The notes: generated by a model not told the origin, from the sequence alone. A stretch of DNA of 64,000 bases from Pecten maximus (GCF_902652985.1 NC_047027.1:7006001-7070000); one strand, 5' to 3'; positions 2,919 to 64,000 are shown, counted from the stretch's first letter. Translations and numbers: made by a program.

Positions 2919-2965
2919 GTACAGAGATAACTACCACTGGTCTTAGTCTGTCTACACCAGTAAGG

Positions 2966-6001: not shown

Positions 6002-6048
6002 GTACAGAGATAACTAACACTGGTCTTGTTCTGTCTACACCAGTAAGG

Positions 6049-40480: not shown

Positions 40481-42754
40481 ACCGTTGCAAATTGCCTCGT
40501 TTTTTATGATTTCGTCAAAAATCTGTATCACTATAATGAATGATATTATTAGATTAAACGTGAAAAATGCAGTTGGTGTTACGACAATAAATCTTATTTA
40601 TTTTTCCAGATCAAACTACCTAAGTGGCAGTTCTACTTCCTAAAATATATAATATAAATTATGTTCTTTACAGAGCATTTTCATAGTGTCACTTGTTTCG
40701 CACTTGTTGTAAATTAAACAAAAAATTACATTTAAAAAAAAGAGCAAACTTTAAGGAAATTACGGATTTCTATCTGGTAAAAAAGGAAAAATTAAATGAA
40801 TAAATTAACAATCATCGAATAAAAAGCGCGCATAATTATGTTTAAATGATGTGAAATAAAACATATGTATCTATCACCGACGAATTTCTGTTGATAGAAA
40901 TGAAACTGACTAGTCTTCATATTTAACATTTTGACGCCACAAGTTACAATATGAGGTAATAAAAATATAGAGGATAAATAAAAAAGAAGAAAAAGGAAAG
41001 TAGAAAAACGGGAAAGATATAATGATGCTGACCATTAAAATGACAAATCAGTGAAGGAGCTAAGGGCTAAGTCATTATATGTTTCATACAGTAAATAAAC
41101 TGTTTTAAGGTTCGTGTCAGAATCCGAAAATAAAATCTACACTAGAATTTGATAAAGCAAAGTGAATTGTGCTGGGCTTCGATAATAATGATAGTTATTT
41201 GGCTTGATATTATAATTTTGTCTCGTGACTACGTCGAGACGGCCAAAACAAAGATTTTCTATTCTGATCACGCGGAATTTTTTGGAAACCAAGATAGTAA
41301 TTGTATACTAAATTGTGAGGATTTATGTCAACTTTACCATGGAAATAGTGTAAGTGAAGGTGTTAGTAATTTGCGGTAAAAATATCGTGGGGGTTACCTT
41401 TTGCAAAATCGCTTCTATTTTTCAGTTTAACATTTATATATGGAAACCATGGTTTTCAGAAATTTTAGGTGTGGGAAAACTCATTTTACATATTACAAAA
41501 GTGATATTTTTCACTAGAAAAAACGATCACTTTTTCTGATATTTTTCAATAGTGTAAAAATATCACTTTTTCCGATTTTACCAATCAAAACATTGCTTAT
41601 GGGAGAAGTTTAAAGCTACCCCGGTAGATTTTGCTATACAATGTAATTAACAGAATTTCAAACAGTATCTTCAGTGATATCAAATAAATTTCACATCTCG
41701 ATAAATACATTTGGTATTACTGAAAACACGGTTAGATATCCTCTATATATTTCCTGTAAACTACACTAACAATGGTACAGACGGTAACATAGCGATCAAT
41801 TCTATCTAGGAGTAATATAGTTTTAAACGATTTAAAACAATCTCCTCAAAATATTCTGAAATCGGCTTAATTTCCACCATATACATGATACAGAAATAAC
41901 AAAACAGGAAAATAACAATTGAGACATTTATTAATAACCCGTATACAATCCCTATAGACAACACTCGACGGTGACTCATTACACCGTAATACAACCTCAA
42001 AAAAAAAATAACGGTATAACATAATCACACGAAATCAATCGTTTTACAATCAAGATATTATACAACATTGACACCAAAACACCAAAACACAAATACTTCA
42101 CAAACATCAATTTCAAACAAATAATCTAAAAGTATAAATATAGATATATATAATCCCCTAAAAAACACACACGCAATTATCTCCACTCTTCAATCCATCG
42201 AATACCACCGGTTAATTACAGTGAACATCGCCATAAGTACACAGTACACTCACTAAGTGTATCCGACGATGTCTTCTATTGAATATAAAATCAAATCATG
42301 GTTATCTCCCTTTACACCTCACAACCAATAATACTATTTACAGAAAAGTATGTTTACAATATACCCTGACAAGAATAATGTTTGTAAACAATCAGAGAAC
42401 CCCCTAGATTTGTTTAACCTCAGTACGGATGTACAGTCTCCGGTATGGTCCCCCGTTAACACACACTAGAAGTGTGGAGAGCAGGCGTATAGATTTATAA
42501 TATAACTTCCCCGTCATTAAATGCTTCCTTATCATACTTAATAAAACAAACATGGGCATGTAAATATATAAATATATTGGCTATATGTATCTGATATGAT
42601 CGTTTTAACGGTGTCTTGTAAAGAAGATTTAACATAGACGTACATAACTGTTCAACCTCACCCTTGGTTGTATCCCATTATTGTACTGTTTTAAAACACT
42701 ACATCAAAACTATTTGTAAAAGTTCCTTGTAAGATAGAATTGCACACTTATGGT

Positions 42755-42960
42755 TACCTAGGCGGTCAGGCTTCGGTTCCCCGATCAGACTGAATAAGTA
42801 TGTGGTCACCTGCCCGATCACGTCGGGTTTCTCCGTATTCCCTGGTTTCATTCCCCAGTAAGATCCCTCGCGCGCTTCAATCCGGGCCGACAAGGGTGAT
42901 TAATACCAGTTGATACATTTCATTTTGAAATTGTTGTAAAATAAATAATTTACATTTTAG
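42755..42960 (+). mobile_element. tRNA-derived V-domain-like SINE, one per macro-repeat unit (also about 47400, 52258, 57145, 61467)
   Basis: B-box-like GGTTCGGTTCCCC and CACGTGGGTTTTCTCC...GGTTTCCTTCCCCAG (best preserved at 57145-57350), tail TTGTTGTAAAATAAATAATTTACATTTT. Confidence 0.7.
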
Positions 42961-43043
42961 AATGAAACTTACATCATCCTAAAAGTTCATGTTACTGTTA
43001 ACGGTACACAACATCTCTAACCTATTACAGCCTACTTTCTACC

Positions 43044-43888
43044 CTACACTGTAAATGTTAATTGGTTTATACTGTCTTCTTTTGTTTGTAAACGTTTTGT
43101 CTTTAATCTTCGCATCATCTTTTTTGTCGCTGTTATCGGTAAATTTGTTGGTGCTGGTTTCAAAATCGACGGCACCTGGGCAACCATAAAATCTCCGAAA
43201 ATTGGTTGTCTGTCCAATAACACTGGTTCATGTTTTAATAGTTTCCTGAATATTTCCAACTGCTTCGATCCTGAGAGAAAAGGTGAAAATGTGTTATAAC
43301 AGTGTTTAATTATGTTGTCTCTTTCTGCTTCAGATTTAATATCAACTGTATCTAGAACTAGATATATATTATTTAGATATTTAAAAAAACAAACCTTTAA
43401 TTGTCTTCCCCACTGTGTTGAAGGTGTCCATTTCACCTGGTCTGACCTGACCGTCCTGACGAAGTGCGCCACACACCCTCAACATATCTTCCGAGGGGGC
43501 GTGGTCGCCCTTGTGGATTTTACTTGGTACTTGAGCGGGGAACTGTATGAGTAAAATATTCAGAGTTAATTTACTAATAACAGATATACATAGCAATGTT
43601 TTGTCGGGAAATGGTACATAGAATAGCTTCTGTTTTGTTTGGTAGATAATTGTTTAACGTCCTATCAACATCTAAGGCTATTTTATATTGTCCTTTCAAT
43701 TCAAGATAATTAAAATATTGATATCATGGGGAAATGATCTGATGTAAAATAACATAATCTGAATTGATATAACCACAATAAGAACACTTTAATAGTTGAC
43801 ATACTTACAATGTTTGAAAACGTCTACTGATGTCTTTCCGTGTCGATACGATCATGTGCCTCAATAGATTACTACATGTAGCGTTCAT
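43044..43888 (-). pseudogene. Family paralogue E1; exons 43888-43809, 43542-43395, 43270-43044; exon 2 is 1 nt short (frameshift in G-run, possibly a sequencing error)
   Basis: G5 at 43495-43499 versus G6 in E2/E4/E5; exon 2 is 148 rather than 149 nt; otherwise intact. Confidence 0.6.
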
Positions 43889-45344
43889 GGTTTACAATTA
43901 TATCTGAGCTCTCTCGTATATCGTGGTTACAGACAGAAGTGTTCAGTCAAAATAAGCCTAATGGTTTAGTACACAACAGTCTGAATATAAACAATGAATG
44001 AACAACAGAAATGATCGTACGATATCGCGTGTCAAGTTAAGCAGCCTCTAAATATGTTGGGGTTTTACCTTCCCTGCCTTGAAGGGATGGACACGTGCGA
44101 ATATTAAGCTAAAACTCGGAATATCAATATATAAACATGTTCTATGTATAGAATTCTGGCAATTTTTCCAGTTTTCAGCAGAAAAACTATATATAGAGTT
44201 TAGAAATACCATGTTTATTTTGATATATCTGTACATAATGATGGTAACATAGAAACATATTAATATGAAACTAGAAATACTGGGATTTTAAATCTAACAA
44301 TATGTACTTATATTGGTGTTAGATTAAATATATATACATTTGTATGTTGTTAATTCGTGATTGATATTAATATTACTATTCTCGATCCAAGTTTACATAA
44401 AATATCACGAATTTACAATCGAACTTCCTTTACATTTCACAACCAATACATGCGACATTGCATATTAAATATTATCTTAATCATTCAGCCTATATAAACA
44501 TGTATAAGCGTGGGTTTTATGTTAGATTGACAATCATGTGCGTTTGTTCGGAAGATTGATAATCATGTGTGTGTTTGTTTGAGTTAAATAGGACAATCAT
44601 GAATAGTAAACTGTATAAAACGTCTTTGTTACTGTCATCCGTTTGATGACAAAGCCTTTTCTATACATAAGTTTTGTTAAACGTGTTTTAAATGAATGCG
44701 GGATGAGTTACTTATGGGATATATAATAGTCTTCTGAATGTAATCCACTATGGCTAAAAACATTTTATTAAGTTAAGACTTTATGACCAGTACTTACAGA
44801 AATGGCAGAGTGATGGACACAATTCATCAAAGGCTATATGTTATAGAGTTTTTAAGGATAACTGTCATTTTAAAAGTTATTTACATACTTTGATAAAGAT
44901 TGAGTCATTTTTTCGTTAATTTCGTACAACTAACCATCAATTTATCAGATTGAGTGTAAGGAAAGAACATGTTCACATTGTAATCGTCAACAAATTTGTG
45001 ATGAATTTCATGATTTACTTGAATGTACAATATCATCTGCTCATAGAATTTTATATATAGACAAATACTGTTGGTCAAGACCAAATATCATTAATTTTAA
45101 CGAACTCATGAATATAACTAAAGTTAAAACACCAATCAAAATGTTACTTTTATCAGAATACTTAATAACATTATATGTCCTGCTTACTAAAAATGAAAAT
45201 GTTTTATTTTGAAACAGTGCCATGTATCAACTACGAGCACTACTTTAATTGTATATGTTTTATTGTCAATATGTTTTTCTCTATACCTCATGTCAGTACA
45301 TTTGCCTGTGAAAAGAGAAGAAAACAAATTTGTATTTGATTTGA

Positions 45345-46220
45345 TGTGTTTGTTTGTTTGGGTTACGGATAATCTAGATAGTGTGTGTTTGTTTGGGTAA
45401 TGTATAATCTAGATAGTGTGTGTTTGTTTGGGTTACGGATAATCAAGATAGTGTGTGTTTGTTTGGGTTACGGATAATCAAGATAGTGTGTGCTTGTTTG
45501 GGTAATGTATAATCTAGATAGTGTGTGTTTGTTTGGGTTACGGATAATCTAGATAGTGTGTTTGTTTGGGTTACGGATAATCTTGATAGTGTGTGTTTGT
45601 TTGGGTTACGGATAATCAAGATAGTGTGTGTTTGTTTGGGTTATGAGTAATCTAGATAACGTGTGTTTGCTTGGGTTATGTATAATCTAGATGGTGTGTG
45701 TTTGTTTGGGTTATGAGTAATCTAGATAGTGTGTGTTTGTTTGGGTTATGGGTAATCTAGATAGTGTGTGTGTTTGTTTTGGTTATGTATAATCTAGATA
45801 GTGTGTGTTTGTTTGGGTTACAGACAATCTAAATAGTTTGTGTTTGTTTGGGTTACGGATAATCTAGATAGTGTGTGTTTGTTTGGGTTATGAGTAATCT
45901 AGATAACGTGTGTTTGCTTGGGTTATGTATAATCTAGATGGTGTGTGTTTGTTTGGGTTATGAGTAATCTAGATAGTGTGTGTTTGTTTGGGTTATGGGT
46001 AATCTAGATAGTGAGTGTGTTTGTTTTGGTTATGTATAATCTAGATAGTGTGTGTTTGTTTGGGTTACAGACAATCTAGATAGTGTGTGTTTGTTTGGGT
46101 TATGGGTAATCTAGATAGTGTGTGTTTGTTTGGGTTATGGGTAATCTAGATAGTGTGTGTTTGTTTGGGTTATGGGTAATCTAGATAGTGTGTGCTTGTT
46201 TGGGTTATGGGTAATCTAGT
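45345..46220. repeat. 35-bp minisatellite ending each macro-repeat unit (also about 49983-51068, 55402-55955, 59537-60272, 63857-64000)
   Basis: GTGTGTGTTTGTTTGGGTTACGGATAATCTAGATA, variable copy number. Confidence 0.96.
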
Positions 46221-47689
46221 GTGTGTACGTGTGTAAACTATCACTGATTTTACCAATCAAAACATTGCTTATGGGAGAACTTTTAAGCTACCACGGTAGA
46301 CTTTGCTATACAATGAAATTAACAGAATTTCAACCAGTATCTTCAGTGATACCAAATAAATTTCACAACTCGAGAAATACATTTGGTATTACTGAAAACA
46401 TGGTTAGATATCCTCTATATATATCTCCTATAAACTACACTAACAATAGACAGTAACATAGCGATCAATTCTATCTAGGAGTAATATAGTTTTAAACGAT
46501 TTAAAGCAATCTCCTCAAAATATTCTGAAATCGGCTTAATTTCGATCATATACATGATACAGAAATAACAAAACAGGAAAATAACAAGTGAGACATTTAT
46601 TGATCACCCGTATACAATCCCTAAATACAACACTCGACAGTGACTCATTACACCGTAATACAACCTCAAAAAAAATAACGGTATAACATAATCACACGAA
46701 ATCAATCGTTTTACAATCAAGTTATTATACAACATTGACACCAAAACACAAAATCACAAATACTTCACAAACATCAATTTCAAACAAATAATCTAAAAGT
46801 ATAAATATAGATATATATAATCCCCTAAAAAAACACACGCAATTATTTCCACTATTCAATCCACCGGATACCACCGGTGGATTACAGTGAACATCGCCAT
46901 AAACACTAATGACGATGTCTTCTATTGAAGATAAAATCAAATCATGGTTATCTCCCTTTACACCTCACAACCAATAATACTATTTACAGAAAAGCATGTT
47001 TACAAAATACCCTGACAAGAATAATGTTTGTAAACAATCAAGGAACCCCCTAGATTTGTTTAACCTCTTCACTACGGATGTACAGTTTCCGATATGGTCC
47101 CCCGTTAACACACTAGAAGTGTGGTGAGGAGGCGTATAGATATATAATACAACTTCCCCGTCATTAAATGCTTCCTTATCATACTTAATAAAACAAACAT
47201 GGGCATGTAAATATATAAATATATTGGCTATATGTATCTGATATGATCGCTTTAACGGTGTCTTGAAAAGAAGATTTAACATAGACGTACATAACTGTTC
47301 AACCTCACCTTTGGTTGTATCCCATTATTGTACTGTTTTAAAACACTACATCAAAACTATTTGTGAAAGTTCCTTGTAAGATAGAATTGCACACTTATGG
47401 TTACCTAGGCGGTCAGGCTTCGGTTCCCCGATCAGACTGAATAAGTATGTGGTCACCTGCCCGATCACGTCGGATTTCTCCGTATTCCCTGGTTTCATTC
47501 CCCAGTAAGATCCCTCGCGCGCTTCAATCCGGGCCGACAAGAGTGATTAATACCAGTTGATATATTTCATTTTGAAATTGTTGTAAAATAAATAATTTAC
47601 ATTTTAGAATGAAACTTACATCATCCTAAAAGTTCATGTTACTGTTAACGGTACACAACATCTCTAACCTATTACAGCCTACTTCGATC

Positions 47690-48535
47690 CTACACTGTAA
47701 ATGTTAATTGGTTTAAACTGTCTTCTTTTGTTTGTAAACGTTTTGTCTTTAATCTTCGCATCATCTTTTTTGTCGCTGTTATCGGTAAATTTGTTGGTGC
47801 TGGTTTCAAAATCGACGGCACCTGGGCAACCATAAAATCTCCGAAAATTGGTTGTCTGTCCAATAACACTGGTTCATGTTTTAATAGTTTCCTGAATATT
47901 TCCAACTGCTTCGATCCTGAGAGAAAAGGTGAAAATGTGTTATAACAGTGTTTGATTATGTTGTTTCTTTCTGCTTTAGATTTAATATCAACTGTATCTA
48001 GAACTAGATATATATTATTTAGATATTTTAAAATACAAACCTTTAATTGTCTTCCCCACTGTGCTGAAGGTATCCTTGTCACGTGGTCTGAATTGACCGT
48101 CCTGACGAAGTGCGCCACACACCCTCAACATATCTTCCGAGGGGGGCGTGGTCGCCCTTATGGATTTTACTTGGTACTTGAGCGGTGAACTGTATGAGTA
48201 AAATATTCAGAGTTAATTTACTAATAACAAATATACATAGCTATGTTTTGTCGGGAAATGGTACATAGAATAGCGATTGTCTGGTTTGGTTTATTATTGT
48301 TTAACGTCCTATCAACATATAAGGCTATTTTAAATTGTCCTTTCAATTCAAGATAATTAAAATATTGATATCATGGGGAAATTATCTGATGTAAATTAAC
48401 ATAATCTGAAATAATATAACCACAATAAGAACACTTTAATAGTTGACATACTTACAATGTTTGAAAACGTCTACTGATGTCTTTCCGTGTCGATAAGATC
48501 ACGTGCCTCAATAGATTACTACATGTAGCGTTCAT
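47690..48535 (-). CDS. Family paralogue E2, 151 aa; exons 48535-48456, 48189-48041, 47916-47690
   Basis: MNATCSNLLRHVILSTRKDISRRFQTFSPLKYQVKSIRATTPPSEDMLRVCGALRQDGQFRPRDKDTFSTVGKTIKGSKQLEIFRKLLKHEPVLLDRQPIFGDFMV...QLTFTV*; GT-AG introns, phases 2 and 1. Confidence 0.82.
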
Positions 48536-51500
48536 GGTTTAATATTATATCTGAGCTCTCTCGTGTATCGTGGTTACAGACAGAAGTGTTCAGTCAAAAT
48601 GAGCCTAATGGCTTAGCACACAACAGTCTGAATATAAACAATGAATGAACAACAGAAATGATCGTACGATATCGCGTGTCAAGTTAAGCAGCCTCTAAAT
48701 ATGTTGGGGTTTTCCTTCCGTGTCGTGAAGGATGGACACGTGCGGATATTAACAGAAACTCGGGATATCATTTTATAAACATGTTCTATGTATAGAATTC
48801 TGGCAATTTTTCCAGTTTACAGCAGAAAAGCTATATATAGAGTTTAGAAATACCATGTTTATTTTTATATATCTGTACATAATGATGGTAACATAGAAAC
48901 ATATTAATATGAAACTAGAAATACTTGGATTTTAAATCTTACAATATGTACTTATATTGGTGTTTGATTACGATATATATATATTTGTATGTTGTTAATT
49001 CGTGATTGATATTAATATCACATTCTCGATCCAAGTTTACATAAAAGATCACGAATTTTCAATCGCGCTTCCTTTACATTTCACAACCAATATATGCGAC
49101 ATTGCATATTAAATATTATCTTAATCATTCAGCCTATATAAACATGTATAACGTGGGTTTTATGTTAGATTGACAATCATGTGCGTTTGTTCGGGAGATT
49201 GATAATCATGTGCGTGTTTGTTTGAGTTAAATAGACAATCATGAATAGTAAACTGTAGAAACGTCTTTGTTACTGTCATCCGTTTGATGACAAACCTTTT
49301 CTATACATAAGTTTTGTTAAACGTGTTTTAAATGAATGCGGGATGAGTTACTTATGGGATATATAATATTCTTCTGAATGTAATCCATTATGGCTAAAGC
49401 ATTTTATTAAGTTAAGACTTTATGACCAGTACTTACAGAAATGGCAGAGTGATGGACACAATTCATCAAAGGCTATATGTTATAGAGTTTTTAAGGATAA
49501 CTGTCATTTTAAAAGTTATTTACATACTTTAATAAAGATAGTCATTTTTTCGTTAATTTCGTACAACTAACCATCAATTTATCAGATTGAGTGTAAGGAA
49601 AGAACATGTTCACATTGTAATCGTCAACAAATTGGTGATGAATTTCATGATTTACTTGAATGTACAATATCGTCTGCTCATAGAATTTTATATATAGACA
49701 AATACTGTTGGTCAAGACCAAATATCATTAATTTTAACGAACTCATGAATATAACTAAAGTTAAAACACTAATCAAACTGTTACTTTTATCAGAATACTT
49801 AATAACATTATATATCCTCCTTGATAAAAATGAAAATGTTTTATTTTGAAACAGTGCCATGTATCAACTACGAGCACTACTTTAATTGTATATGTTTTAT
49901 TGTCAATATGTTTTTCTCTATACCTCATGTCAGTACATTTGCATGTGAAAAGAGAAGAAAACGAATTTGTATTTGATTTGATGTGTTTGTTTGTTTGGGT
50001 TACGGATAATCTAGATAGTGTGAGTTTGTTTGGGTTACGGATAATCTAGATAGTGTGTGTTTGTTTGGGTTACGGATAATCTAGATAGTGTGTGTTTGTT
50101 TGGGTTACGGATAATCTAGATAGTGTGTGTTTGTTTGTTTGGGTTATGTATAATCTAGACAGTGTGTGTTTGTTTGGGTTACGGATAATCTAGATAGTGT
50201 GTGTTTGCTTGGGTTACGGATAATCTAGATAGTGTGTGTTTGTTTGGGTAATGTATAATCTAGATAGTCTGTGTTTGGGTTACGGATAATCTAGATAGTG
50301 TGTGTTTGTTTGGGTTACGGATAATCTAGATAGTGTGTGTTTGTTTGGGTAATGTATAATCTAGATAGTGTGTGTTTGTTTTGGTTATGATAATCTAGAT
50401 AGTGTGTGTTTGTTTGGGTTACGGATAATCAAGATAGTGTGTGTTTGTTTGGGTTATGAGTAATCTAAATAACGTGTGTTTGCTTGGGTTATGTATAATC
50501 TAGATAGTGTGTGTTTGTTTGGGTTATGAGTAATCTAGATAGTGTGTGTTTGTTTGGGTTATGGGTAATCTAGATAGTGTGTGTGTTTGTTTTGGTTATG
50601 TATAATCTAGATAGTGTGTGTTTGTTTGGGTTACAGACAATCTAGATAGTTTGTGTTTGTTTGGGTTACGGATAATCTAGATAGTGTGTGTTTGTTTGGG
50701 TTACGGATAATCAAGATAGTGTGTGTTTGTTTGGGTTATGAGTAATCTAAATAACGTGTGTTTGCTTGGGTTATGTTTAATCTAGATAGTGTGTGTTTGG
50801 TTGGGTTATGAGTAATCTAGATAGTGTGTGTTTGTTTGGGTTATGGGTAATCTAGATAGTGTGTGTGTTTGTTTTGGTTATGTATAATCTAGATAGTGTG
50901 TGTTTGTTTGGGTTACAGACAATCTAGATAGTTTGTGTTTGTTTGGGTTACGGATAATCTAGATAGTGTGTGTTTGTTTGGGTTATGGGTAATATAGATA
51001 GTGTGTGTTTGTTTGGGTTATGGGTAATCTAGATAGTGTGTGTTTGTTTGGGTTATGGGTAATCTAGTATGTGTACGTGTGTAAACTATCACTGATTTTC
51101 CAATCAAAACATTGCTTATGGGAGAACTTTTAAGCTACCACGGTAGACTTTGCTATACAATGAAATTAACAGAATTTCAACCAGTATCTTCAGTGATACC
51201 AAATAAATTCCACAACTCGAGAAATACATTTGGTATTACTGAAAACATGGTAAGATATCCTCTATATATATCTCCTATAAACTACACTGACAATAGATAA
51301 TAGCATAGCGATCAATTCTATCTAGGAGTAATGTAGTTTTAAACGATTTAAAACAATCTCCTCAAAATATTCTGAAATCGGCTTAATTTCGATCATATAC
51401 ATGATACAGAAATAACAAAACAGGAAAATAACAATTGAGACATTTATTGATCACCCGTATACAATCCCTAAGTACAACACTCGACAGTGACTCATTACAC

Positions 51501-52546
51501 CGTAATACAACCTCAAAAAAAAATAACGGTATGACATAATCACACGAAATCAATCGTTTTACAACCAAGTTACTATAATATATTCAGACAAAAAAAATAC
51601 GAAAACATGAATACTTTACAAACAACTATTTCAAACAAATAATCTAGAAGTTTATATATATGAAATCCCAAAAGACACACCCAATATTTCCACTCTTCAA
51701 TCCACCGAATACCACCGGCTGATTACAGTGAACATCGCCATAAGTACATAGTACAATCACTAACGGCGATGTTTTCTATTGAAGATAAAATCAAATCATG
51801 GTTATCTCCCTTTACACCTCACAACCAATAATACTATTTACAGAAAAGTATGTTTACAATATACCCTGACAAGAATAATGTTTTTAAACAATCAAGGAAC
51901 ACCCTAGATTTGTTTAACCTCCTCAGTACGGATGTACAGTCTCCGGTATGGTCCCCCGTTAACACACACTAGAAGTGTGGAGAGCAGGCGTATAGATTGA
52001 TAATATAACTTCCCCGTCATTAAATGCTTCCTTATCATACTTAATAAAACAAACATGGGCATGTAAATATATAAATATATTGGCTATATGTATCTGATAT
52101 GATCGCTTTAACGGTGTCTTGTAAAGAAGATTTAACATAGACGTACACAACTGTTCAACCTCACCCTTGGTTGTATCCCATTATTGTACTGTTTTAAAAC
52201 ACTACATCAAAACTATTTGTAAAAGTTCCTTGTAAGATAGAATTGCACACTTATGGTTACCTAGGCGGTCAGGCTTCGGTTCCCCGATCAGACGTGAATG
52301 AGTATGTGGTCACCTGCCCGACCACGTGAGTTTTCTCCGTATTCCCTGGTTTCCTTCCACATTAAGATTCCTCGCGCGCTTCAATCCGGACCAACAAGAA
52401 TAATAATACCAGTTGATATTACTCATTTTGCAATTGTTGTAAAATAAATAATTTACATTTTAGAATGAAACTTACATCATCCTAAAAGTTCATGTTACTG
52501 TTAACGGTACACAATATATCTAACCTATTTCAGCCTACTTTCGATC

Positions 52547-53955: not shown

Positions 53956-56900
53956 GGTTTACAATTAGATCTGAGCTCTCTCGTGTATCGTGGTTACAGA
54001 CAGAAGTGTTCAGTCAAAATGAGCCTAATGGCTTAGTACACAACAGCCTGAATATAAACAATGAATGAACAACAGAAATGATCGTACGATATCGCGTGTC
54101 AAGTTAAGCAGCCTCTAAATATGTTGGGGTTTACCTTCCGTGTCGTGAAGGGATGGACACGTGCGAATGTTAACTAAAACTCGGAATATCAATATATAAA
54201 CATGTTCTATGTATAGAATTCTGGCAATTTTTCCAGTTTTCAGCAGAAAAACTATATATAGAGTTTAGAAATACCATGTTTATTTTTATATATCTGTACA
54301 TAATGATGGTAACATAGAAACATATTAATATGAAACTAGAAATACTGGGATTTAAATCTAACAATATGTACTTATATTTGTGTTTGATTAAAATATATAT
54401 ACATTTGTATGTTGTTAATTCGTGATTGATATTAATATTATATTCTCGATCCAAGTTTACATAAAAGATCACGACTTTACAATCGAACTTCCTTTACATT
54501 TCACAACCAATACATGCGACATTGCATATTAAATATTATCTTAATCATTCAGCCTATATAAACATGTATAGCGTGGGTTTTCTGTTAGATTGACAATCAT
54601 GTGCGTTTGTTCGGGAGATTGACAATCATGTGTGTGTTTGTTTGGGTTAAATGGACAATCATGAATAGTAAACTGTATAAACGTCTTTGTTACTGTCATC
54701 CTTTTGATGACAAAGCTGTTCTATACATAAGTTTTGTTAAACGTGTTTTAAATGAATGCGGGATGAGTTACTTATGGGATATATAATATTCTTCTGAATG
54801 TAATCCATTATGGCAAAAACATTTTATTAAGTTAAGACTTTATGACCAGTACTTACAGAAATGGCAGAGTGATGGACACAATTCATCAAAGGCTATATGT
54901 TATAGAGTTTTTAAGGATAACTGTCATTTTAAAAGTTATTTACATACTTTAATAAAGATAGTCATTTTTTCGTTAATTTCGTACAACTAACCATCAATTT
55001 ATCAGATTGAGTATAAGGAAAGAACATGTTCACATTGTAATCGTCAACAAATTGGTGATGAATTTCATGATTTACTTGAATGTACAATATCGTCTGCTCA
55101 TAGAATTTTATATATAGACAAATACGGTTGGTCAAGACCAAATATCATTAATTTTAACGAACTCATGAATATAACTAAAGTTAAAACACTAATCAAACTG
55201 TTACTTTTATCAGAATACTTAATAACATTATATGTCCTGCTTGCTAAAAATGAAAATGTTTTATTTTGAAACAGTGCCATGTATCAACTACGAGCACTAC
55301 TTTAATTGTATATGTTTTATTGTCAATATGTTTTTCTCTATACCTCATGTCAGTACATTTGCCTGTGAAAAAAGAAGAAAACAAATTTGTATTTGATTTT
55401 ATGTGTTTGTTTGTTTGGGTTACGGATAATCTAGATAGTGTGTGTTTGTTTGGGTAATGTATAATCTAGATAGTGTGTGTTTGTTTGGGTTACGGATAAT
55501 CAAGATAGTGTGTGTTTGTTTGGGTTACGGATAATCTAGATAGTGTGTGCTTGTTTGGGTAATGTATAATCTAGATAGTGTGTGTTTGTTTGGGTTACGG
55601 ATAATCTAGATAGTGTGTTTGTTTGGGTTACGGGTAATCTAGATAGTGTGTGTTTGTTTGGGTTATGGGTAATCTAGATAGTGTGTGCTTGTTTGGGTTA
55701 CGGATAATCTAGATAGTGTGTGTTTGTTTGGTTACGGGTAATCTAGATAGTGTGTGTTTGTTTGGTTACGGGTAATCTAGATAGTGTGTGTTTGTTTGGG
55801 TTACGGGTAATCTAGATAGTGTGTGTTTGTTTGGGTTATGGATAATCTAGATAGTGTGTGTTTGTTTGGGTTATGGGTAATCTAGATAGTGTGTGTTTGT
55901 TTGGGTTATGGGTAATCTAGATAGTGTGTGTTTGTTAGGGTTATGGGTAATCTAGTGTGTGTACGTGTGTAAACTATCACTGATTTTACCAATAAAAACA
56001 TTGCTTATGGGAGAACTTTTAAGCTACAACGGTAGACTTTGCTATACAATGTAATTAACAGAATTTCAACCAGTATCTTCAGTGATACCAAATAAATTTC
56101 ACAACTCGAGAAATACATTTGGTATTACTGAAAACCCGGTTAGATATCCTCTATATATATCTCCTATCAACTACACTAACAATGGTACAGACAGTAACAT
56201 AGCGATCAATTCTATCTAGGAGTAATATAGTTTTAAACGATTTAAAACAATCTCCTCAAAATATTCTGAAATCGGCTTAATTTCCACCATATACATGATA
56301 CAGAAATAACAAAACAGAAAAATAACAATTGAGACATTTATTGATAAGCCGTATACAATCCCTAAATACAACACTCGACAGTGACTCATTACACCGTAAT
56401 ACAACCTCAAAACAATAACGGTATAGCGGAATCACACGAATATCAATCGTTTTACAAACAAGTTATTATACAACATTTACACCAAAACACAAAAACACAA
56501 ATACTTCACAAACATCAATTTCAAACAAATAATCTAAAAGTATAAATATAGATATATATAATCCCCTAAAAAACACACACGCAATTATTTCCACTATTCA
56601 ATCCACCGGATACCAACGGTGGATTACAGTGAACATCGCCATAAGCACTAATGACGATGTTTTCTATTGAAGATAAAATCAAATCATGGTTATCTCCCTT
56701 TACACCTCACAACCAATAATACTATTTACAGAAAAGCATGTTTACAAAATACCCTGACAAGAATAATGTTTGTAAGCAATCAAGGAACCCCCTAGATTTG
56801 TTTAACCTCTTCACTACGGATGTACAGTTTCCGATATGGTCCCCCGTTAACACACTAGAAGTGTGGTGAGGAGGCGTATAGATATATAATACAACTTCCC

Positions 56901-57436
56901 CGTCATTAAATGCTTCCTTATCATACTAAATCAAACAAACATGGGCATGTAAATATATAAATATATTGGCTATATGTATCTGATATGATCGTTTTAACGG
57001 TGTCTTGTAAAGAAGATTTAACATAGACGTACACAACTTTTAAACCTGGCCCTTGGGTGTATCCCATTATTGTACTGTTTTTAAACACTACATAAAACAA
57101 ATATTTGTAAAAGTTCCTTGTAAGATAGAATTGCACACTTAAGTTTCACCTAGGCGGCCGGGGTTCGGTTCCCCGATCAGACGTGAATGAGTATGTGGTC
57201 ACCTGGCCGACCACGTGGGTTTTCTCCGTATTCCCTGGTTTCCTTCCCCAGTAAGATCCCTCGCGCGCTTCCATCCGGGCCAACAAGAGTGATTAATACC
57301 AGTTGATATATTTCATTTTGCAATTGTTGTAAAATAAATAATTTACATTTTAGAATGAAACTTACATCATCCTAAAAGTTCATGTTACTGTTAACGGTAC
57401 ACAACATCTCTAACCTATTTCAGCCTACTTTCGACC

Positions 57437-58284
57437 CTACACTGTAAATGTTAATTGGTTTATACTGTCTTCTTTCGTTTGTAAACGTTTTGTCTTTAAT
57501 CTTCGCATCATCTTTTTTGTCGCTGTTATCGGTAAATTTGTTGGTGCTGGTTTCAAAATCGACGGCACCTGGGCAACCATAAAATCTCCGAAAATTGGTT
57601 GTCTGTCCAATAACACTGGTTCATGTTTTAATAGTTTCTTGAATATTTCCAACTGCTTCGATCCTGAGAGAAAAGGTGAAAATGTGTTATAACAGTGTTT
57701 GATTATGTTGTTTCTTTCTGCTTTAGATTTAATATCAACTGTATCTAGAACTGGATATATATATTATTTAGATATTTAAAAAAACAAACCTTTAATTGTC
57801 TTCCCCACTGTGTTGAAGGTGTCCATTTCACCTGGTCTGACCTGACCGTCCTGACGAAGTGCGCCACACACCCTCAACATATCTTCCGAGGGGGGCGTGG
57901 TCGCCCTTGTTGATTTTACTTGGTACTTGAGCGGGGAACTGTATGAGTAAAATATTCAGAGTTAATTTACTAATAACAAATATACATAGCAATGTTTTGT
58001 CGGGAAATGGTACATAAAATAGCTTTTGTTTTGTTTGGTTGATAATTGTTTAACGTCCTATCAACATCTAGGGCTATTTTAAATTGTCCTTTCAATTCAA
58101 GATAATTAAAATATTGATATCATGGGGGAATTATCTGATGTAAATTAACATAATCTGAAATAATATAATCACAATAAGAACACTTTATTAGTTGACATAC
58201 TTACAATGTTTGAAAACGTCTACTGATGTCTTTCCGTGTCGATACGATCACGTGCCTCAATAGATTACTACATGAAGCGTTCAT
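57437..58284 (-). CDS. Family paralogue E4, 151 aa; exons 58284-58205, 57938-57790, 57663-57437
   Basis: Open frame after splicing; a 2-nt intron indel breaks the naive read-through ORF but not the spliced model. Confidence 0.82.
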
Positions 58285-61200
58285 GGTTTACAATTAGATC
58301 TGAGCTCTCTCGTATATCGTGGTTACAGACAGAAGTGTTCAGTCAAAATAAGCCTAATGGCTTAGTACACAACAGCTTGAATAAGCAATGAATGAAAAAC
58401 AGAAATGATCGCACGATATCGCGTGTCAAGTTAAGCAGCCTCTAAATATGTTGGGGTTTTCCTTCCGTGCCGTGAAGGGTGGACACGTGCGGATATTAAC
58501 AGAAACTCGGAATATCATTTGATAAACATGTTGTTTGTATAGAATTCTGGCAATTTTTCCAGTTTTAGGCAGAAAAACTATATATAGAGTTTAGAAATAC
58601 CATGTTTATTTTTATATATCTGTACATAATGATGGTAACATAGAAACCTTTTAAAATGAAAATAGAAATACTTGGATTTTAAATCTTACAATATATACTT
58701 ATATTGGTGTTAGATTACGATATATATACATTTGTATGTTGTTAATTCGTGATTGATATTAATATCACATTCTCGATCCAAGTTTACATAAAATATCACG
58801 AATTTCCAATCGCGCTTCCTTTACATTTCACAACCAATACATGCGACATTGCATATTAAATATTATCTTAATCATTCAGCCTATATAAACATGTATAACG
58901 TGGGTTTTATGTAAGATTGACAATCATGTGCGTTTGTTCGGAAGATTGATAATCATGTGTGTGTTTGTTTGAGTTAAATAGACAATCATGAATAGTAAAC
59001 TGTAGAAACGTCTTTGTTACTGTCATCCGTTTGATGACAAACCTTTTCTATACATAAGTTTTGTTAAACGTGTTTTAAATGAATGCGGGATGAGTTACTT
59101 ATGGGATATATAATATTCTTCTGAATGTAATCCATTATGGCTAAAACATTTTATTAAGTTAAGACTTTATGACCAGTACTTACAGAAATGGCAGAGTGAT
59201 GGACACAATTCATCAAAGGCTATATGTTATAGAGTTTTTAAGGATAACTGTCATTTTAAAAGTTATTTACATACTTTGATAAAGATAGAGTCATTTTTTC
59301 GTTAATTTCGTACAACTAACCATCAATTTATCAGATTGAGTGTAAGGAAAGAACATGTTCACATTGTAATCGTCAACAAATTGGTGATGAATTTCATGAT
59401 TTACTTGAATGTACAATATCGTCTGCTTATAGACAAATACTGTTGGTCAAGACCAAATATCATTAATTTTAACGAACTCATGAATATAACTAAAGTTAAA
59501 ACACTAATCAAACTGTTACTTTTGTATTTGATTTTATGTGTTTGTTTGTTTGGGTTACGGATAATCTAGATAGTGTGTGTTTGTTTGGGTTACGGATACT
59601 CTAGATAGTGTGTGTTTGTTTGGGTAAAGTATAATCTAGATAGTGTGTGTTTGTTTGGGTTACGGATAATCTTGATAGTGTGTGTTTGTTTGGGTTACGG
59701 ATAATCAAGATAGTGTGTGTTTGTTTGGTTTATGTATAATCTAGATAGTGTGTATTTGTTTGGGTTACGGATAATCTAGATAGTGTGTGTTTGTTTGGGG
59801 TACGGATAATCTTGATAGTGTGTGTTTGTTTGGGTTACGGATAATCAAGATAGTGTGTGTTTGTTTGGGTTACAGATAATCTAGATAGTGTGTGTTTGTT
59901 TGGGTTATGAGTAATCTAGATAACGTGTGTTTGCTTGGGTTATGTATAATCTAGATAGTGTGTGTTTGTTTGGGTTATGAGTAATCTAGATAGTGTTTGT
60001 TTGTTTGGGTTATGGGTAATCTAGATAGTGTGTGTGTTTGTTTTGGTTATGTATAATCTAGATAGTGTGTGTTTGTTTGGGTTACAGACAATCTAGATAG
60101 TTTGTGTTTGTTTGGGTTACGGATAATCTAGATAGTGTGTGTTTGTTTGGGTTATGGGTAATCTAGATAGTGTGTGTTTGTTTGGGTTATGGGTAATCTA
60201 GATAGTGTGTGTTTGTTTGGGTTATGGGTAATCTAGATAGTGTGTGCTTGTTTGGGTTATGGGTAATCTAGTGTGTGTACGTGTGTAAACTATCACTGAT
60301 TTTACCAATCAAAACATTGCTTATGGGAGAACTTTTAAGCTACCACGGTAGACTTTGCTATACAATGAAATTAACAGAATTTCAACCAGTATCTTCAGTG
60401 ATACCAAATAAATTTCACAACTCGAGAAATACATTTGGTATTACTGAAAACATGGTTAGATATCCTCTATATATATCTCCTATAAACTACACTGACAATA
60501 GATAGTAACATAGCGATCAATTCTATCTAGGAGTAATATAGTTTTAAACGATTTAAAACAATCTCCTCAAAATATTCTGAAATCGGCTTAATTTCGATCA
60601 TATACATGATACAGAAATAACAAAACAGGAAAATAACAAGTGAGACATTTATTGATCACCCGTATACAATCCCTAAATACAACACTCGACAGTGACTCAT
60701 TACACCGTAATACAACCTCAAAAAAAAAAAACGGTATAACATAATCACACGAAATCAATCGTTTTACAACCAAGTTACTATAATATATTCAGACAAAAAA
60801 AAAAAAAAACGAAAACATGAATACTTTACAAACAACTATTTCAAACAAATAATCTAGAAGTTTATATATATGAAATCCCAAAAGACACACGCAATTATTT
60901 CCACTCTTCAATCCACCGGATACCACCGGCTGATTACACTGAACATCGCCATAAGTACATAGTACAATCACTAACGGCGATGTTTTCTATTGAAGATAAA
61001 ATCAAATCATGGTTATCTCCCTTTACACCTCACAACCAATAATACTATTTACAGAAAAGTATGTTTACACTATACCCTGACAAGAATAATGTTTGTAAAC
61101 AATCAGAGAACCCCCTAGATTTGTTTAACCTCCTCAGTACGGATGTACAGTCTCCGGTATGGTCCCCCGTTAACACACACTAGAAGTGTGGAGAGCAGGC

Positions 61201-61757
61201 GTATAGATTGATAATATAACTTCCCCGTCATTAAATGCTTCCTTATCATACTTAATAAAACAAACATGGGCATGTAAATATATAAATATATTGGCTATAT
61301 GTATCTGATATGATCGCTTTAACGGTGTCTTGTAAAGAAGATTTAACATAGACGTACATAACTGTTCAACCTCACCCTTGGTTGTATCCCATTATTGTAC
61401 TGTTTTAAAACACTACATCAAAACTATTTGTGAAAGTTCCTTGTAAGATAGAATTGCACACTTATGGTTACCTAGGCGGTCAGGCTTCGGTTCCCCGATC
61501 AGACTGAATAAGTATGTGGTCACCTGCCCGATCACGTCGGGTTTCTCCGTATTCCCTGGTTTCATTCCTCAGTAAGATCCCTCGCGCGCTTCAATCCGGG
61601 CCGACAAGAGTGATTAATACCAGTTGATACATTTCATTTTGAAATTGTTGTAAAATAAATAATTTACATTTTAGAATGAAACTTACATCATCCTAAAAGT
61701 TCATGTTACTGTTAACGGTACACAACATCTCTAACCTATTACAGCCTACTTTCTACC

Positions 61758-62603
61758 CTACACTGTAAATGTTAATTGGTTTATACTGTCTTCTTTTGTT
61801 TGTAAACGTTTTGTCTTTAATCTTCGCATCATCTTTTTTGTCGCTGTTATCGGTAAATTTGTTGGTGCTGGTTTCAAAATCGACGGCACCTGGGCAACCA
61901 TAAAATCTCCGAAAATTGGTTGTCTGTCCAATAACACTGGTTCATGTTTTAATAGTTTCCTGAATATTTCCAACTGCTTCGATCCTGAGAGAAAAGGTGA
62001 AAATGTGTTATAACAGTGTTTGATTATGTTGTTTCTTTCTGCTTTAGATTTAATATCAACTGTATCTAGAACTGGATATATATTATTTAGATATTTGAAA
62101 ATACAAACCTTTAATTGTCTTCCCCACTGTGTTGAAGGTATCCTTGTCACGTGGTCTGAATTGACCGTCCTGACGAAGTGCGCCCAACACCCTCAACATA
62201 TCTTCCGAGGGGGGCGTGGTCGCCCTTATGGATTTTACTTGGTACTTGAGCGGTGAACTGTATGAGTAAAATATTCAGAGTTAATTTACTAATAACAAAT
62301 ATACATAGCAATGTTTTGTCGGGAAATGGTACATAGAATAGCGATTGTCTGGTTTGGTTTATTATTGTTTAACGTCCTATCAACATATAAGGCTATTTTA
62401 AATTGTCCTTTCAATTCAAGATAATTAAAATATTGATATCATGGGGAAATTATCTGATGTAAAATAACATTATCTGAATTGATATAACCACAATAAGAAC
62501 ACTTTAATAGTTGACATACTTACAATGTTTGAAAACGTCTACTGATGTCTTTTCGTGTCGATAAGATCACGTGCCTCAATAGATTACTACATGTAGCGTT
62601 CAT
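61758..62603 (-). CDS. Family paralogue E5, 151 aa; exons 62603-62524, 62257-62109, 61984-61758
   Basis: Open frame; exon 2 reads ...TTPPSEDMLRVLGALRQDGQFRPRDKDTFNTVGKTIKG. Confidence 0.82.
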
Positions 62604-64000
62604 GGTTTAATATTATATCTGAGCTCTCTCGTATATCGTGGTTACAGACAGAAGTGTTCAGTCAAAATGAGCCTAATGGCTTAGTACACAACAGCCTGAA
62701 TATAAACAATGAATGAAAAACGGAAATGATCGTACGATATCGCGTGTCAAGTTAAGCAGCCTCTAAATATGTTGGGGTTTTCCTTCCGTGTCGTGAAGGA
62801 TGGACACGTGCGAATGTTAAGTAAAAATCTGAATATCAATTTATAAACATGTTGTTTGTATAGAATTCTGGCAATTTTTCCAGTTTACAGCAGAAAAACT
62901 ATATATAGAGTTTAGAAATACCATGTTTATTTTTATATATCTGTACATAATGATGGTAACATAGAAACATATTAATATGAAACTAGAAATACTTGGATTT
63001 TAAATCTTACAATATATACTTATATTGGTGTTAGATTACGATATATATAAATTTGTATGTTGTTAATTCGTGATTGATATTAATATCACATTCTCGATCC
63101 AAGTTTACATAAAATATCACGAATTTTCAATCGCGCTTCCTTACATTTCACAACCAATACATGCGACATTGCATATTAAATATTATCTTAATCATTCAGC
63201 CTATATAAACATGTATAACGCGGGTTTTATGTAAGATTGACAATCATGTGCGTTTGTTCGGAAGATTGATAATCATGTGTGTGTTTGTTTGAGTTAAATA
63301 GACAATCATGAATAGTAAACTGTAAAAACGTCTTTGTTACTGTCATCCGTTTGATGACAAACCTTTTCTATACATAAGTTTTGTTAAACGTGTTTTAAAT
63401 GAATGCGGGATGAGTTACTTATGGGATATATAATATTCTTCTGAATGTAATCCACTATGGCTAAAACATTTTATTAAGTTAAGACTTTATGACCAGTACT
63501 TACAGAAATGGCAGAGTGATGGACACAATTCATCAAAGGCTATATGTTATAGAGTTTTTAAGGATAACTGTCATTTTAAAAGTTATTTACATACTTTGAT
63601 AAAGATAGAGTCATTTTTTCGTTAATTTCGTACAACTAACCATCAATTTATCAGATTGAGTGTAAGGAAAGAACATGTTCACATTGTAATCGTCAACAAA
63701 TTGGTGATGAATTTCATGATTTACTTGAATGTACAATATCGTCTGCTTATAGACAAATACTGTTGGTCAAGACCAAATATCATTAATTTTAACGAACTCA
63801 TGAATATAACTAAAGTTAAAACACTAATCAAACTGTTACTTTTGTATTTGATTTTATGTGTGTGTTTGTTTGGGTTACGGATAATCTAGATAGTGTGTGT
63901 TTGTTTGGGTTACGGATAATCTAGATAGTGTGTGTTTGTTTGGGTAAAGTATAATCTAGATGGTGTGTGTTTGTTTGGGTTACGGATAATCTAGATAGTG

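What the first reader, a model, noticed from the sequence alone, without database searches (positions are those of the whole stretch)
41560..64000. The 4.3-4.9 kb macro-repeat is a tandem gene amplification carrying an extended paralogue on the minus strand
Seen: each unit carries a 3-exon gene homologous to A-D with about 40 extra C-terminal residues, Pro/Thr-rich then basic (KPAPTNLPITATKKMMRRLKTKRLQTK). The array converges tail-to-tail with D across a 47-bp satellite and reaches the window end. Inference: dosage amplification; the basic tail may act as an NLS or a nucleic-acid/membrane-binding segment and give the E subfamily a new localisation.
Basis: partly seen in the sequence, partly recalled or inferred. 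Interest (0 to 1): 0.75.

Follow-up and report, generated by a model that had tools for sequence, protein, structure and literature searches.

The report
Scallop orphan gene tandem array
A small, strongly basic protein gene found only in scallops has been copied head-to-tail five times here (plus three promoter-and-first-exon stubs and one inverted copy just outside the window); it is transcribed and correctly spliced, but this is an ordinary lineage-specific gene amplification of unknown function.

Summary
Window 41577-64000 contains five head-to-tail units of 4.3-4.9 kb. Each unit is about 3.54 kb of unique DNA plus a 35-bp satellite block, and each carries a 3-exon minus-strand gene.

- **Identity:** the genome matches Pecten maximus. 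NCBI already models five of the six copies as 151-aa "uncharacterized proteins".
- **Copy state:** four window copies (E2-E5) are intact. E1 has a 1-nt deletion in a C-run of exon 2.
- **Extent:** the array continues 7.2 kb past the window as three stubs that keep only the first exon. A sixth, inverted, intact copy follows.
- **Expression:** spliced transcript contigs confirm intron 2 in 4 of 4 runs and intron 1 in 2 of 4.
- **Homology to A-C:** real (hhalign probability 98.8%), covering E residues 1-95.
- **The tail is old:** the roughly 43-44 extra C-terminal residues also occur in Mizuhopecten, Argopecten and Ylistrum orthologues. Their first half (residues 96-124) is the best-conserved part of the protein.
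- **Nuclear signal:** no classical NLS consensus lies in the tail.
- **Not tested:** dosage and localisation claims, and copy number by reads.

This is an ordinary tandem amplification of a scallop-restricted orphan gene, of modest interest.

The parts
41577..46248 (-). Unit U1 of the macro-repeat, with gene E1. Exon 1 is 43809-43888, exon 2 is 43395-43542 (148 nt, with a 1-nt deletion in a C-run), and the exon 3 coding part is 43044-43270.
   Evidence: One search shows the frameshift, reading ..ATTPPRKIC then a stop. No 151-aa NCBI protein corresponds to E1.
46249..51095 (-). Unit U2 with gene E2, intact. Exons are 48456-48535, 48041-48189 and 47690-47916.
   Evidence: The exon translations match P0007, LOC117341157.
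51096..55984 (-). Unit U3 with gene E3, intact. Exons are 53876-53955, 52898-53046 and 52547-52773. It is the most diverged window copy.
   Evidence: It matches P0009, LOC117341159.
53086..53643 (.). A 558-bp dispersed repeat, probably a non-autonomous transposable element, inserted in intron 1 of E3 only.
   Evidence: It appears as a gap in 5 of 6 rows of alignment A1. The own-genome DNA search found 1753 first-look candidates; 40 were scored, and the full-length matches besides the query's own place are 84-89% identical and lie on many contigs.
55985..60300 (-). Unit U4 with gene E4, intact. The exon 1 coding part is 58205-58284, and a transcript contig reaches 58344. Exon 2 is 57790-57938 and the exon 3 coding part is 57437-57663.
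   Evidence: it matches P0001, LOC117341160. Spliced contigs were found. The joint 57662>57789 appears in 4 of 4 runs and 57938>58205 in 2 of 4. X6 record 19 spans all three exons with 3, 0 and 0 mismatches.
60301..64000 (-). Unit U5 with gene E5, intact. Exons are 62524-62603, 62109-62257 and 61758-61984. Its satellite runs on to 804 nt past the window end.
   Evidence: It matches P0008, LOC117341156 isoforms X1 and X2, which give the same protein.
45346..46226 (.). 35-bp satellite block that closes U1, upstream of E1. The equivalent blocks are at 49983-51074, 55403-55962, 59538-60278 and 63858-64000 and beyond.
   Evidence: TRF gives period 35, 16-31 copies and 88-93% matches. Differences in block length account for most of the variation in unit length.
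38835..40476 (.). 47-bp satellite (34 copies) lying between the 3' end of D and the array.
37748..38296 (+). 3' part of paralogue D. Exon 2 runs from the acceptor at 37748 to 37905; the in-frame codons are 37749-37904, with the last G of the split codon at 37905. My reading of the last exon is 38190-38296. It converges tail-to-tail on E1.
   Evidence: No RNA evidence or database protein was seen for D.

Best explanation
This is a real, transcribed tandem array of a gene restricted to scallops (Pectinidae).

**Family layout.** The whole family sits in this one locus of the Pecten maximus genome. It comprises four short paralogues (A-D, + strand) and six E copies. The E type (151 aa) shares its first 95 or so residues and both intron phases with the A-C type (118 aa). 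It ends in a different, longer C-terminus, which was already present in the common ancestor of Pecten, Mizuhopecten, Argopecten and Ylistrum.

**Amplification (inferred).** In the P. maximus lineage a 4.3-4.9 kb unit (gene + about 1.4 kb upstream + 35-bp satellite + 3' flank) multiplied by unequal crossing-over. The copies have since been reshuffled by gene conversion, which explains their mosaic similarity. One unit lost its 3' two kilobases through a single deletion and was then itself copied three times. That left three intact 'promoter + exon 1' stubs upstream of E5.

**Protein (inferred, not shown).** It is a largely disordered, very basic protein (net charge +12 to +16).
- The conserved E-specific segment RQP[IV][FY]GD[FL]MV..P...K..P...PI is most likely a short docking motif.
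- The basic helix that follows most likely binds something electrostatically: nucleic acid, an acidic membrane or an acidic protein surface.
- The acid-poor, Arg/Ser/Thr-rich N-terminus looks like an organelle (mitochondrial) presequence.
For: **Array structure**
- Five units in the window.
- Substitution distances among U1-U5 are 2.8-5.8%.
- A transposable-element insertion marks U3 alone.
- Nearest neighbours change along the unit. In one stretch U1-U5 differ at 1 of 300 sites; in another, U3-U5 differ at 4 of 250 while U1-U3 differ at 27 of 247.

**Genes**
- Canonical splice sites in 5 of 5 window copies.
- 5 of 6 genomic copies are open exon by exon.
- NCBI proteins exist for those five.

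**Transcription**
- Spliced contigs in 4 of 4 runs from four studies.
- The genome has no intronless copy. Exon 2 and exon 3 each have 6 hits, all at this locus, so the joints come from RNA.

**Constraint**
- E6 against E1-E5: exons differ at 23-26 of 452-453 sites and introns at 59-63 of 321 sites (Fisher p <= 4.3e-8).
- dN/dS is 0.35-0.61 in 11 of the 12 pairs with 20 or more coding changes.
- Exon 3 is the least variable part (13 of 224 columns among E1-E5).

**Age of the tail**
- Orthologues align over query residues 5-149.
- Residues 96-124 are 55-66% identical between genera, against 22-48% for the other segments; the tail as a whole (96-151) is 43-50%.
- The last 30 residues keep a net charge of +6 or +7 in 4 of 4 genera.

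**Homology to A-C:**

**Family confined to the locus:**

**Stubs**
- All three share the same deletion junction.
- Exon 1 is intact, with donor GTAACT instead of GTAAGT.

**Protein features**
- AF2 gives pLDDT 53 with helices at 3-26, 45-57, 78-89 and 122-149.
- The first 40 residues have net charge +4 to +7 and 0-1 acidic residues.
Against: - Copy number rests on one PacBio CLR assembly (wtdbg2, Arrow and freebayes polishing; passages of PMC7191990). I did not check it with reads.
- E1 is broken as assembled. This could be a real pseudogene or a homopolymer error.
- Two closely related pairs give dN/dS above 1: E2-E5 at 1.13 from 5 changes, and E3-E6 at 1.89 from 23 changes.
- Exon 2 varies as much as the introns among E1-E5 (18 of 149 columns against 31 of 266 and 12 of 124). 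Part of the protein may therefore be unconstrained or diversifying.
- Lower exon divergence could partly reflect exon-biased gene conversion rather than selection.
- No function is shown. There is no Pfam hit at E <= 10, no PDB sequence hit at E <= 1, and no ESM Atlas look-alike.
- The AF2 model has low confidence.
- No targeting predictor was available, so the presequence reading rests on composition only. Hydrophobic moments are unremarkable (0.42-0.48).
- Logan contigs can be chimeric between paralogues. X6 record 19 matches E4 in exons 1-2 but carries an E3/E6-type letter at 57566 in exon 3.
Confidence: 0.8

Rival explanations
1. Assembly artefact. The five units would be over-expanded copies, or uncollapsed haplotypes laid in tandem, of one or two real units.
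For: - The assembly comes from noisy PacBio Sequel reads with wtdbg2.
- The genome has 1.71% heterozygosity (passages of PMC7191990).
- T6, T7 and the 5' half of U5 differ by only 0.4-0.5%.
- I laid no DNA reads on the array.
Against: - U1-U5 differ by 2.8-5.8% in substitutions.
- They differ in satellite length.
- U3 has a 558-bp transposable element.
- E1 has an indel.
- They encode five different proteins.
- Run X9 holds both letters at 57566, in contigs summing to depth 1085 of 1573. At least two sequence forms are therefore transcribed in that one run.
- The similarity pattern is mosaic, not a pairing of units as two haplotypes would give.
Confidence: 0.07
2. The copies were amplified for dosage, and the basic tail is a nuclear localisation signal that sends the E subfamily to a new compartment, the nucleus.
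For: - The tail has 8 basic residues in 15 (KKMMRRLKTKRLQTK).
- Its charge is conserved across 4 of 4 genera.
- Exon 3 is almost identical among E1, E2, E4 and E5, with 0-3 differences in 224 nt.
- Several copies appear to be expressed.
Against: - There is no K-K/R-x-K/R or bipartite match in the tail of 5 of 5 P. maximus E proteins. Only the M. yessoensis orthologue has one there, KRQR at residue 136 (the consensus is recalled from memory).
- The N-terminus looks like an organelle presequence rather than that of a nuclear protein.
- The copies differ at 6-11% of residues, concentrated in exon 2. This is more than pure dosage would require.
- Neither expression level nor localisation was measurable here.
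Confidence: 0.2
3. A decaying array. The copies would be transcribed but functionless relics of a segmental duplication, on their way to becoming pseudogenes.
For: - E1 is frameshifted.
- Three units have lost exons 2-3.
- Exon 2 varies like intron sequence among E1-E5.
- Some pairwise dN/dS values are near or above 1.
- No known domain was found.
Against: - 5 of 6 copies keep the full frame and all splice sites.
- Exons are 3-4 times less diverged than introns against the old copy E6.
- The E type has been kept in four genera, with a conserved motif.
Confidence: 0.1

Closest known systems
NCBI gene models 'uncharacterized protein' LOC117341156, 157, 159, 160 and 237 (Pecten maximus), and their orthologues LOC110454621 (Mizuhopecten yessoensis), XP_069115159 (Argopecten irradians) and LOC132565052 (Ylistrum balloti)
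   Same: E2-E6 are these models. The exon-wise translations equal P0007, P0009, P0001, P0008 and P0002. The orthologues share the length (143-152 aa), the N-terminus, the EDMLR.WG and TIKG motifs, and the whole tail.
   Different: None of them has a name, a domain or a paper. Searching six LOC ids returned 0 papers. E1 and the three first-exon stubs have no protein model in the clusters I read.
The short paralogues A-C of the same locus (P. maximus LOC117340768 and LOC117340770; M. yessoensis LOC110454623)
   Same: Both have three exons with intron phases 2 and 1. hhalign gives probability 98.8% over E 1-95 against A 4-105. The E-type and A-type locus numbers are also two apart on one contig in M. 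yessoensis.
   Different: - A-C end 13 residues after the aligned part (..SSVRALLKGFKFD), while E has 56 more.
- A-C are much better conserved between Pecten and Mizuhopecten. Whole-protein identity is 73% and exon 2 identity 79%, against 48-52% for E.
- No similarity between the two kinds of C-terminus was detectable.
Tandemly arrayed, lineage-specific gene expansions in bivalve genomes (for example the HSP70 expansions mentioned in Kenny et al. 2020, PMC7191990; passage seen)
   Same: Head-to-tail copies in one orientation, a few per cent diverged, with signs of concerted evolution.
   Different: - This is a small orphan gene with no known domain.
- Each unit carries its own satellite block.
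- The array includes amplified units that keep only the promoter and exon 1.
Mitochondrial presequences and basic C-terminal tails of small mitochondrial-ribosome proteins (recalled from memory, not from any call)
   Same: The N-terminal 40 residues have net charge +4 to +7 with 0-1 acidic residues and are rich in Ser, Thr, Arg and Leu. The C-terminal 30 residues have net charge +6 or +7.
   Different: There is no sequence match to any Pfam family, including those of such proteins. No targeting predictor was run.

Membership tests
Tandem gene array (tandem duplication) | Two or more adjacent copies of a whole gene, head to tail, in the same orientation | tested here: met
   Five full units lie on the minus strand with their boundaries in register. 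Every unit has a complete gene.
Tandem gene array (tandem duplication) | The copies are distinct loci, not assembly duplicates | tested here: inconclusive
   Supporting signs are 2.8-5.8% divergence, a unit-specific transposable element and indel, and mosaic similarity, plus two letters at 57566 in one RNA run. No long-read or depth test was possible.
Pectinid A-E family, E subfamily | Three coding exons with intron phases 2 and 1, and the split-Gly junction ..IKG|S | tested here: met
   The introns are confirmed by transcript joints.
Pectinid A-E family, E subfamily | Significant sequence similarity to A-C type proteins | tested here: met
   hhalign gives probability 98.8% and E 7.2e-17. Smith-Waterman scores of 67-72 compare with 21 +/- 4 in shuffles, reached by 0 of 5000. 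D alone is weak: score 34, reached by 37 of 5000.
Pectinid A-E family, E subfamily | The E-type tail: RQP[IV][FY]GD[FL]MV ... K..P...PI followed by a basic end | tested here: met
   It is present in all 6 P. maximus copies and in 3 of 3 other genera. Invariant columns in A2 are R97 Q98 P99 G102 D103 M105 V106 P110 K114 P117 P121 K126.
Classical nuclear localisation signal (consensus recalled from memory) | Monopartite K-[KR]-x-[KR], or bipartite [KR]2-x10-12 followed by at least 3 basic residues in 5, within the tail | tested here: not met
   0 of 5 P. maximus E proteins have either pattern in residues 96-151. P0002 has KRLK at residue 86, outside the tail. P0003 has KRQR at residue 136. A non-classical signal is not excluded.
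Mitochondrial presequence (features recalled from memory) | An N-terminal 20-40 residues that is net positive, almost free of acidic residues, and able to form an amphipathic helix | tested here: inconclusive
   Charge is +4 to +7 with 0-1 Asp/Glu in 4 of 4 genera. AF2 gives a helix at 3-26 at pLDDT 60-69. The hydrophobic moment is only 0.42-0.48. No predictor and no cleavage-site test were available.
Secreted or membrane protein | A hydrophobic signal peptide or transmembrane segment | tested here: not met
   The maximum Kyte-Doolittle mean over 15 residues is 1.27 at residue 99 in the P. maximus E proteins (0.77-0.95 in the three orthologues) and 0.39-0.55 in A-type proteins. The N-terminus has no hydrophobic core.
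PCNA-interacting PIP box (consensus recalled from memory) | Q-x-x-[ILM]-x-x-[FY]-[FY] | tested here: not met
   0 of 10 proteins match. QPIFGDFM has Phe at position 4 and Met at position 8.
Any Pfam-A family | A match at or near the gathering score | tested here: not met
   There are 0 families at E <= 10 for P0001 and P0002, at E <= 1 for the two long ORFs, and at E <= 0.01 for P0013.

The most novel reading that the evidence does not exclude
The E proteins would be a scallop-specific class of imported (mitochondrial or other organelle) basic adaptor proteins. The E-only motif RQP[IV][FY]GD[FL]MV..P...K..P...PI would dock a conserved partner, and the basic helix would bind nucleic acid or an acidic membrane. 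The three amplified 'promoter + exon 1' stubs would work as extra promoters whose first exons splice onto exon 2 of E5. The array would then tune output both by gene copy number and by promoter copy number.
Probability: 0.12. Interest if true: 0.55.

Novelty: new member of a known kind. Interest (0 to 1): 0.3.

Why it matters
The finding gives a clean, well-delimited example of how a taxonomically restricted gene family grows. All ten members sit in one locus of about 76 kb. Both subfamilies predate the split of Pecten from Mizuhopecten, and the E type occurs in four scallop genera. There is a recent species-level amplification with concerted evolution, and partial units that keep only the promoter and first exon.

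For scallop biology it flags an expressed, conserved but completely uncharacterised small basic protein. The best-conserved part of that protein is exactly the subfamily-specific extension. It does not open a long-standing question, and the genes are already in the public annotation.

Tried and rejected
**Searches that found nothing**
- Pfam on the long ORFs and on the database proteins: nothing.
- ESM Atlas on the whole protein and on residues 90-151: no usable hit.
- PDB sequence search with the E profile: 0 hits at E <= 1.
- Rfam and tRNA scans of 38000-64000: nothing. The tRNA-like stretch I thought I saw in the E3 insertion is therefore not a recognisable tRNA.
- Paper search for six LOC ids: 0 papers.
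- Findings search by words: nothing.

**Searches with limited yield**
- phmmer of P0001 against 1.84 billion representatives gave only four scallop proteins. It also gave one bacterial Ig-repeat protein (P0006; 8 stretches, 34% identity, Thr/Val-rich), which I reject as compositional.
- The profile search with A2 found no further relatives: 5 of 609 candidates, all already known.
- tblastn of the E last exon against the window found no trace of the tail near A-D. The origin of the extension, for example read-through into an old 3' UTR, could not be traced.

**Steps not taken or not useful**
- AF2 with 10 sequences gave pLDDT 53. I ran no fold search on it because such a model gives meaningless matches.
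- The sigma-70 promoter and terminator scan is a bacterial tool and means nothing for this animal gene.
- My first frame for D's last exon was wrong and was redone.

**Ideas rejected**
- Dispersed transposon carrying the gene: rejected because exon 2 and exon 3 occur only at this locus.
- Secreted peptide or prohormone: rejected because there is no hydrophobic N-terminus.

**Papers and supplements**
- Supplementary files of papers were closed. Gene-family tables of Kenny et al. 2020 or of the 2021 reannotation (PMC8437780, seen as a search listing only) might list this family, and I could not see them.
- For PMC7191990 I saw the listing abstract and the passages.

Full report
**What is there.**
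- The window has no N.
- It lies at contig C13:7,006,001-7,070,000 of a 918-Mb, 3,983-contig genome.
- Protein hits name Pecten maximus. The contig count matches the published assembly (abstract passage of PMC7191990).
- From 41577 to the window end there are five head-to-tail units: U1 41577-46248, U2 46249-51095, U3 51096-55984, U4 55985-60300, and U5 from 60301.
- Each unit is about 3.54 kb of non-satellite DNA followed by a 35-bp satellite block of 16-31 copies.
- Unit length (4316-4889 nt) varies mainly with the satellite. In U3 it also reflects a 558-bp insertion, a dispersed repeat with at least 1753 first-look candidates in the genome; 40 were scored, and the full-length matches besides the query's own place are 84-89% identical.

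**The gene.**
- Each unit carries a minus-strand gene of three coding exons (80, 149 and 227 nt). Intron phases are 2 and 1, the donors are GTAAGT and GTTTGT, the acceptors are ..ACAG and ..TCAG, and the stop is TAG in 5 of 5 window copies.
- Exon by exon, E2-E5 and a sixth copy outside the window are open. They equal the NCBI proteins P0007, P0009, P0001, P0008 and P0002, all 151 aa and all 'uncharacterized'.
- E1 has one C fewer in a C-run of exon 2. It reads ..ATTPPRKIC then a stop, and it has no protein in the clusters I read.
- The assembly was built from PacBio CLR reads and polished with short reads (passages). I therefore cannot tell a real pseudogene from a homopolymer error.
Full-length queries were the database proteins returned by the tools.

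**Beyond the window.** Using 30 kb fetched past the window end:
- U5's satellite ends 804 nt past the window.
- Three shorter units (about 2.4 kb) follow. They keep the upstream region, exon 1 and the satellite but lack most of intron 1, exons 2-3 and the 3' flank.
- All three have the same deletion junction. Their exon 1 is intact and encodes the same peptide as E2 and E5. Their donor is GTAACT.
- T6 and T7 are 0.4-0.5% from each other and from U5. T8 is 3.5% away.
- About 4 kb further on lies an inverted, intact sixth copy (E6 = LOC117341237).
- Whole-genome searches find exon 3 six times, E-type exon 2 six times and A-type exon 2 four times, all within this locus.

**Is it real and alive?**
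- U1-U5 differ by 2.8-5.8%.
- The closest pair changes from segment to segment. In one 300-nt stretch U1-U5 differ at 1 of 300 sites. In another, U3-U5 differ at 4 of 250, U2-U4 at 6 of 244 and U1-U3 at 27 of 247. This is the pattern of gene conversion and unequal exchange, not of two haplotypes laid side by side.
- I laid contigs of four runs from four studies on 56000-59530. All were Logan contigs; one is on record as RNA and three are guessed to be RNA.
  - All four showed the intron-2 joint 57662>57789.
  - Two of the four showed the intron-1 joint 57938>58205.
  - One 497-nt contig covers exon 3, exon 2 and exon 1 up to 58344, with 3, 0 and 0 mismatches.
- The genome holds no intronless copy, so these joints come from RNA.
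- In run X9 both letters occur at 57566. The alternative letter is the E3/E6 state, so more than one sequence form is transcribed.
- Contigs give no usable depth, so I rank nothing by expression.
- Against the old copy E6, exons differ at 23-26 of 452-453 sites but introns at 59-63 of 321 sites (Fisher p <= 4.3e-8).
- dN/dS is 0.35-0.61 in 11 of the 12 pairs with 20 or more coding changes. It is 1.13 for E2-E5 (5 changes) and 1.89 for E3-E6 (23 changes).
- Among E1-E5, exon 3 is the least variable part (13 of 224 columns). Exon 2 varies as much as the introns (18 of 149).

**Relation to A-D.**
- Reading C from the sequence gives the same architecture. Its exon 1 starts MN.. and ends in phase 2, its exon 2 ends ..ILG in phase 1, and it has a short last exon.
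- This model equals NCBI LOC117340770 and LOC117340768.
- E4 exon 2 against A, B and C exon 2 scores 67-72, while shuffles give 21 +/- 4 (0 of 5000 reach it). D scores 34, reached by 37 of 5000.
- Profile against profile, E 1-95 aligns with A-type 4-105 at probability 98.8% and E 7.2e-17.
- After that point the A type has 13 residues and E has 56. The last exon gives 75 against 31 residues.
- The 'about 40 extra residues' claim is therefore right. No similarity between the two endings was detectable.

**Age of the tail.**
- phmmer against 1.84 billion representatives found, apart from P. maximus itself, three scallop proteins and one compositional bacterial hit. The scallop proteins are M. yessoensis LOC110454621 (152 aa), A. 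irradians XP_069115159 (143 aa) and Y. balloti LOC132565052 (149 aa).
- All three scallop proteins carry the tail.
- Residues 96-124 (RQPIFGDFMVAQVPSILKPAPTNLPIT) are 55-66% identical between P. maximus and the other genera. The other segments are 22-48% identical, and the tail as a whole (96-151) is 43-50%.
- The basic end keeps its charge (+6 or +7 in the last 30 residues in 4 of 4 genera) but not its sequence (22-37% identity).
- In M. yessoensis an A-type gene (LOC110454623) sits on the same 949,760-bp contig, two locus numbers away from the E type.
- The E subfamily and its tail are therefore old. What is new in P. maximus is the copy number. All six copies are 89-94% identical to each other and at most 52% identical to other genera, whether through recent duplication or concerted evolution.

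**How it may work.**
- Shown: the protein has no Pfam, PDB or Atlas relative and no hydrophobic segment. Its net charge is +12 to +16.
- Shown: the low-confidence AF2 model (pLDDT 53) has four helices, at 3-26, 45-57, 78-89 and 122-149, joined by disordered stretches.
- Inferred: the conserved E-only segment is a short docking motif, and the basic helix is an electrostatic binder.
- Inferred: the acid-poor, Arg/Ser/Thr-rich first 40 residues resemble an organelle presequence. This rests on composition only, with no predictor, and I put it at roughly one in four.
Neither classical consensus, as I recall them, is present in the tail of any of the 5 P. maximus proteins.
- A PIP-box reading of QPIFGDFM fails the consensus.

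**Verdict.**
Tandem amplification of an extended paralogue holds. A newly gained tail does not. NLS, dosage and localisation are untested or weakened.
- The genes are already annotated, though unnamed and undescribed; searching six LOC ids found 0 papers.
- This is a new member of a known kind, a lineage-specific tandem array of an orphan gene, and of modest interest.

Noticed in passing
window 2870-3178, 5959-6303 and 7048-7350 (+): These are exons of one or two temptin-like genes. The Pfam Temptin_C model matches at E 3.9e-9, 5.1e-9 and 1.4e-18. The first two ORFs are near-duplicates covering the same half of the domain.
   Followed up: partly
C13:7070805-7077175 (beyond the window; loci L007 and L008): Three amplified stubs of the E unit keep the upstream region, an intact exon 1 (donor GTAACT) and the satellite. 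They share one deletion junction. They lie upstream of E5 in the same orientation and could serve as extra first exons. NCBI lists two isoforms of E5 that give the same protein.
   Followed up: partly
window 56118-56235 and 57062-57415: Two short stretches of the unit have very high summed contig depth in all four runs, up to 45,038 in X6. Many partly fitting contigs lie there, which suggests dispersed repeats. The second stretch begins about 20 nt downstream of the E4 stop, so the 3' UTR probably runs into a repeat. No AATAAA or ATTAAA lies within 537 nt downstream of the stop.
   Followed up: no
window 37617-37803 (+): A 90-bp tandem duplication (2.1 copies, 97% matches) doubles the acceptor region of D's exon 2. 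I used the second acceptor and did not test the first.
   Followed up: no
window 16001-20000: A 4-kb stretch has only 16-18% G+C and a strong A-over-T skew (0.41-0.46) on the + strand. It lies between paralogues A and B.
   Followed up: no
window 24025-24966 and 15492-15757 (+): A 27-bp satellite (35 and 10 copies) lies downstream of B and of A. In B's copy it keeps a 395-codon frame open with the repeat (SVIDKTTRK)n. This is probably chance, because the period is a multiple of three.
   Followed up: no
proteins P0003, P0010 and P0011 (Mizuhopecten yessoensis LOC110454621): The three 152-aa 'isoforms' combine two versions of the exon-1 residues and two versions of the exon-2 residues with one shared exon 3. 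This looks like a partial tandem duplication of the 5' part of the E gene in that species as well.
   Followed up: no
window 1-1726: A 16-bp satellite (108 copies) has a strong G-over-C skew of 0.41. A related 16-bp array lies at 31194-31494.
   Followed up: no
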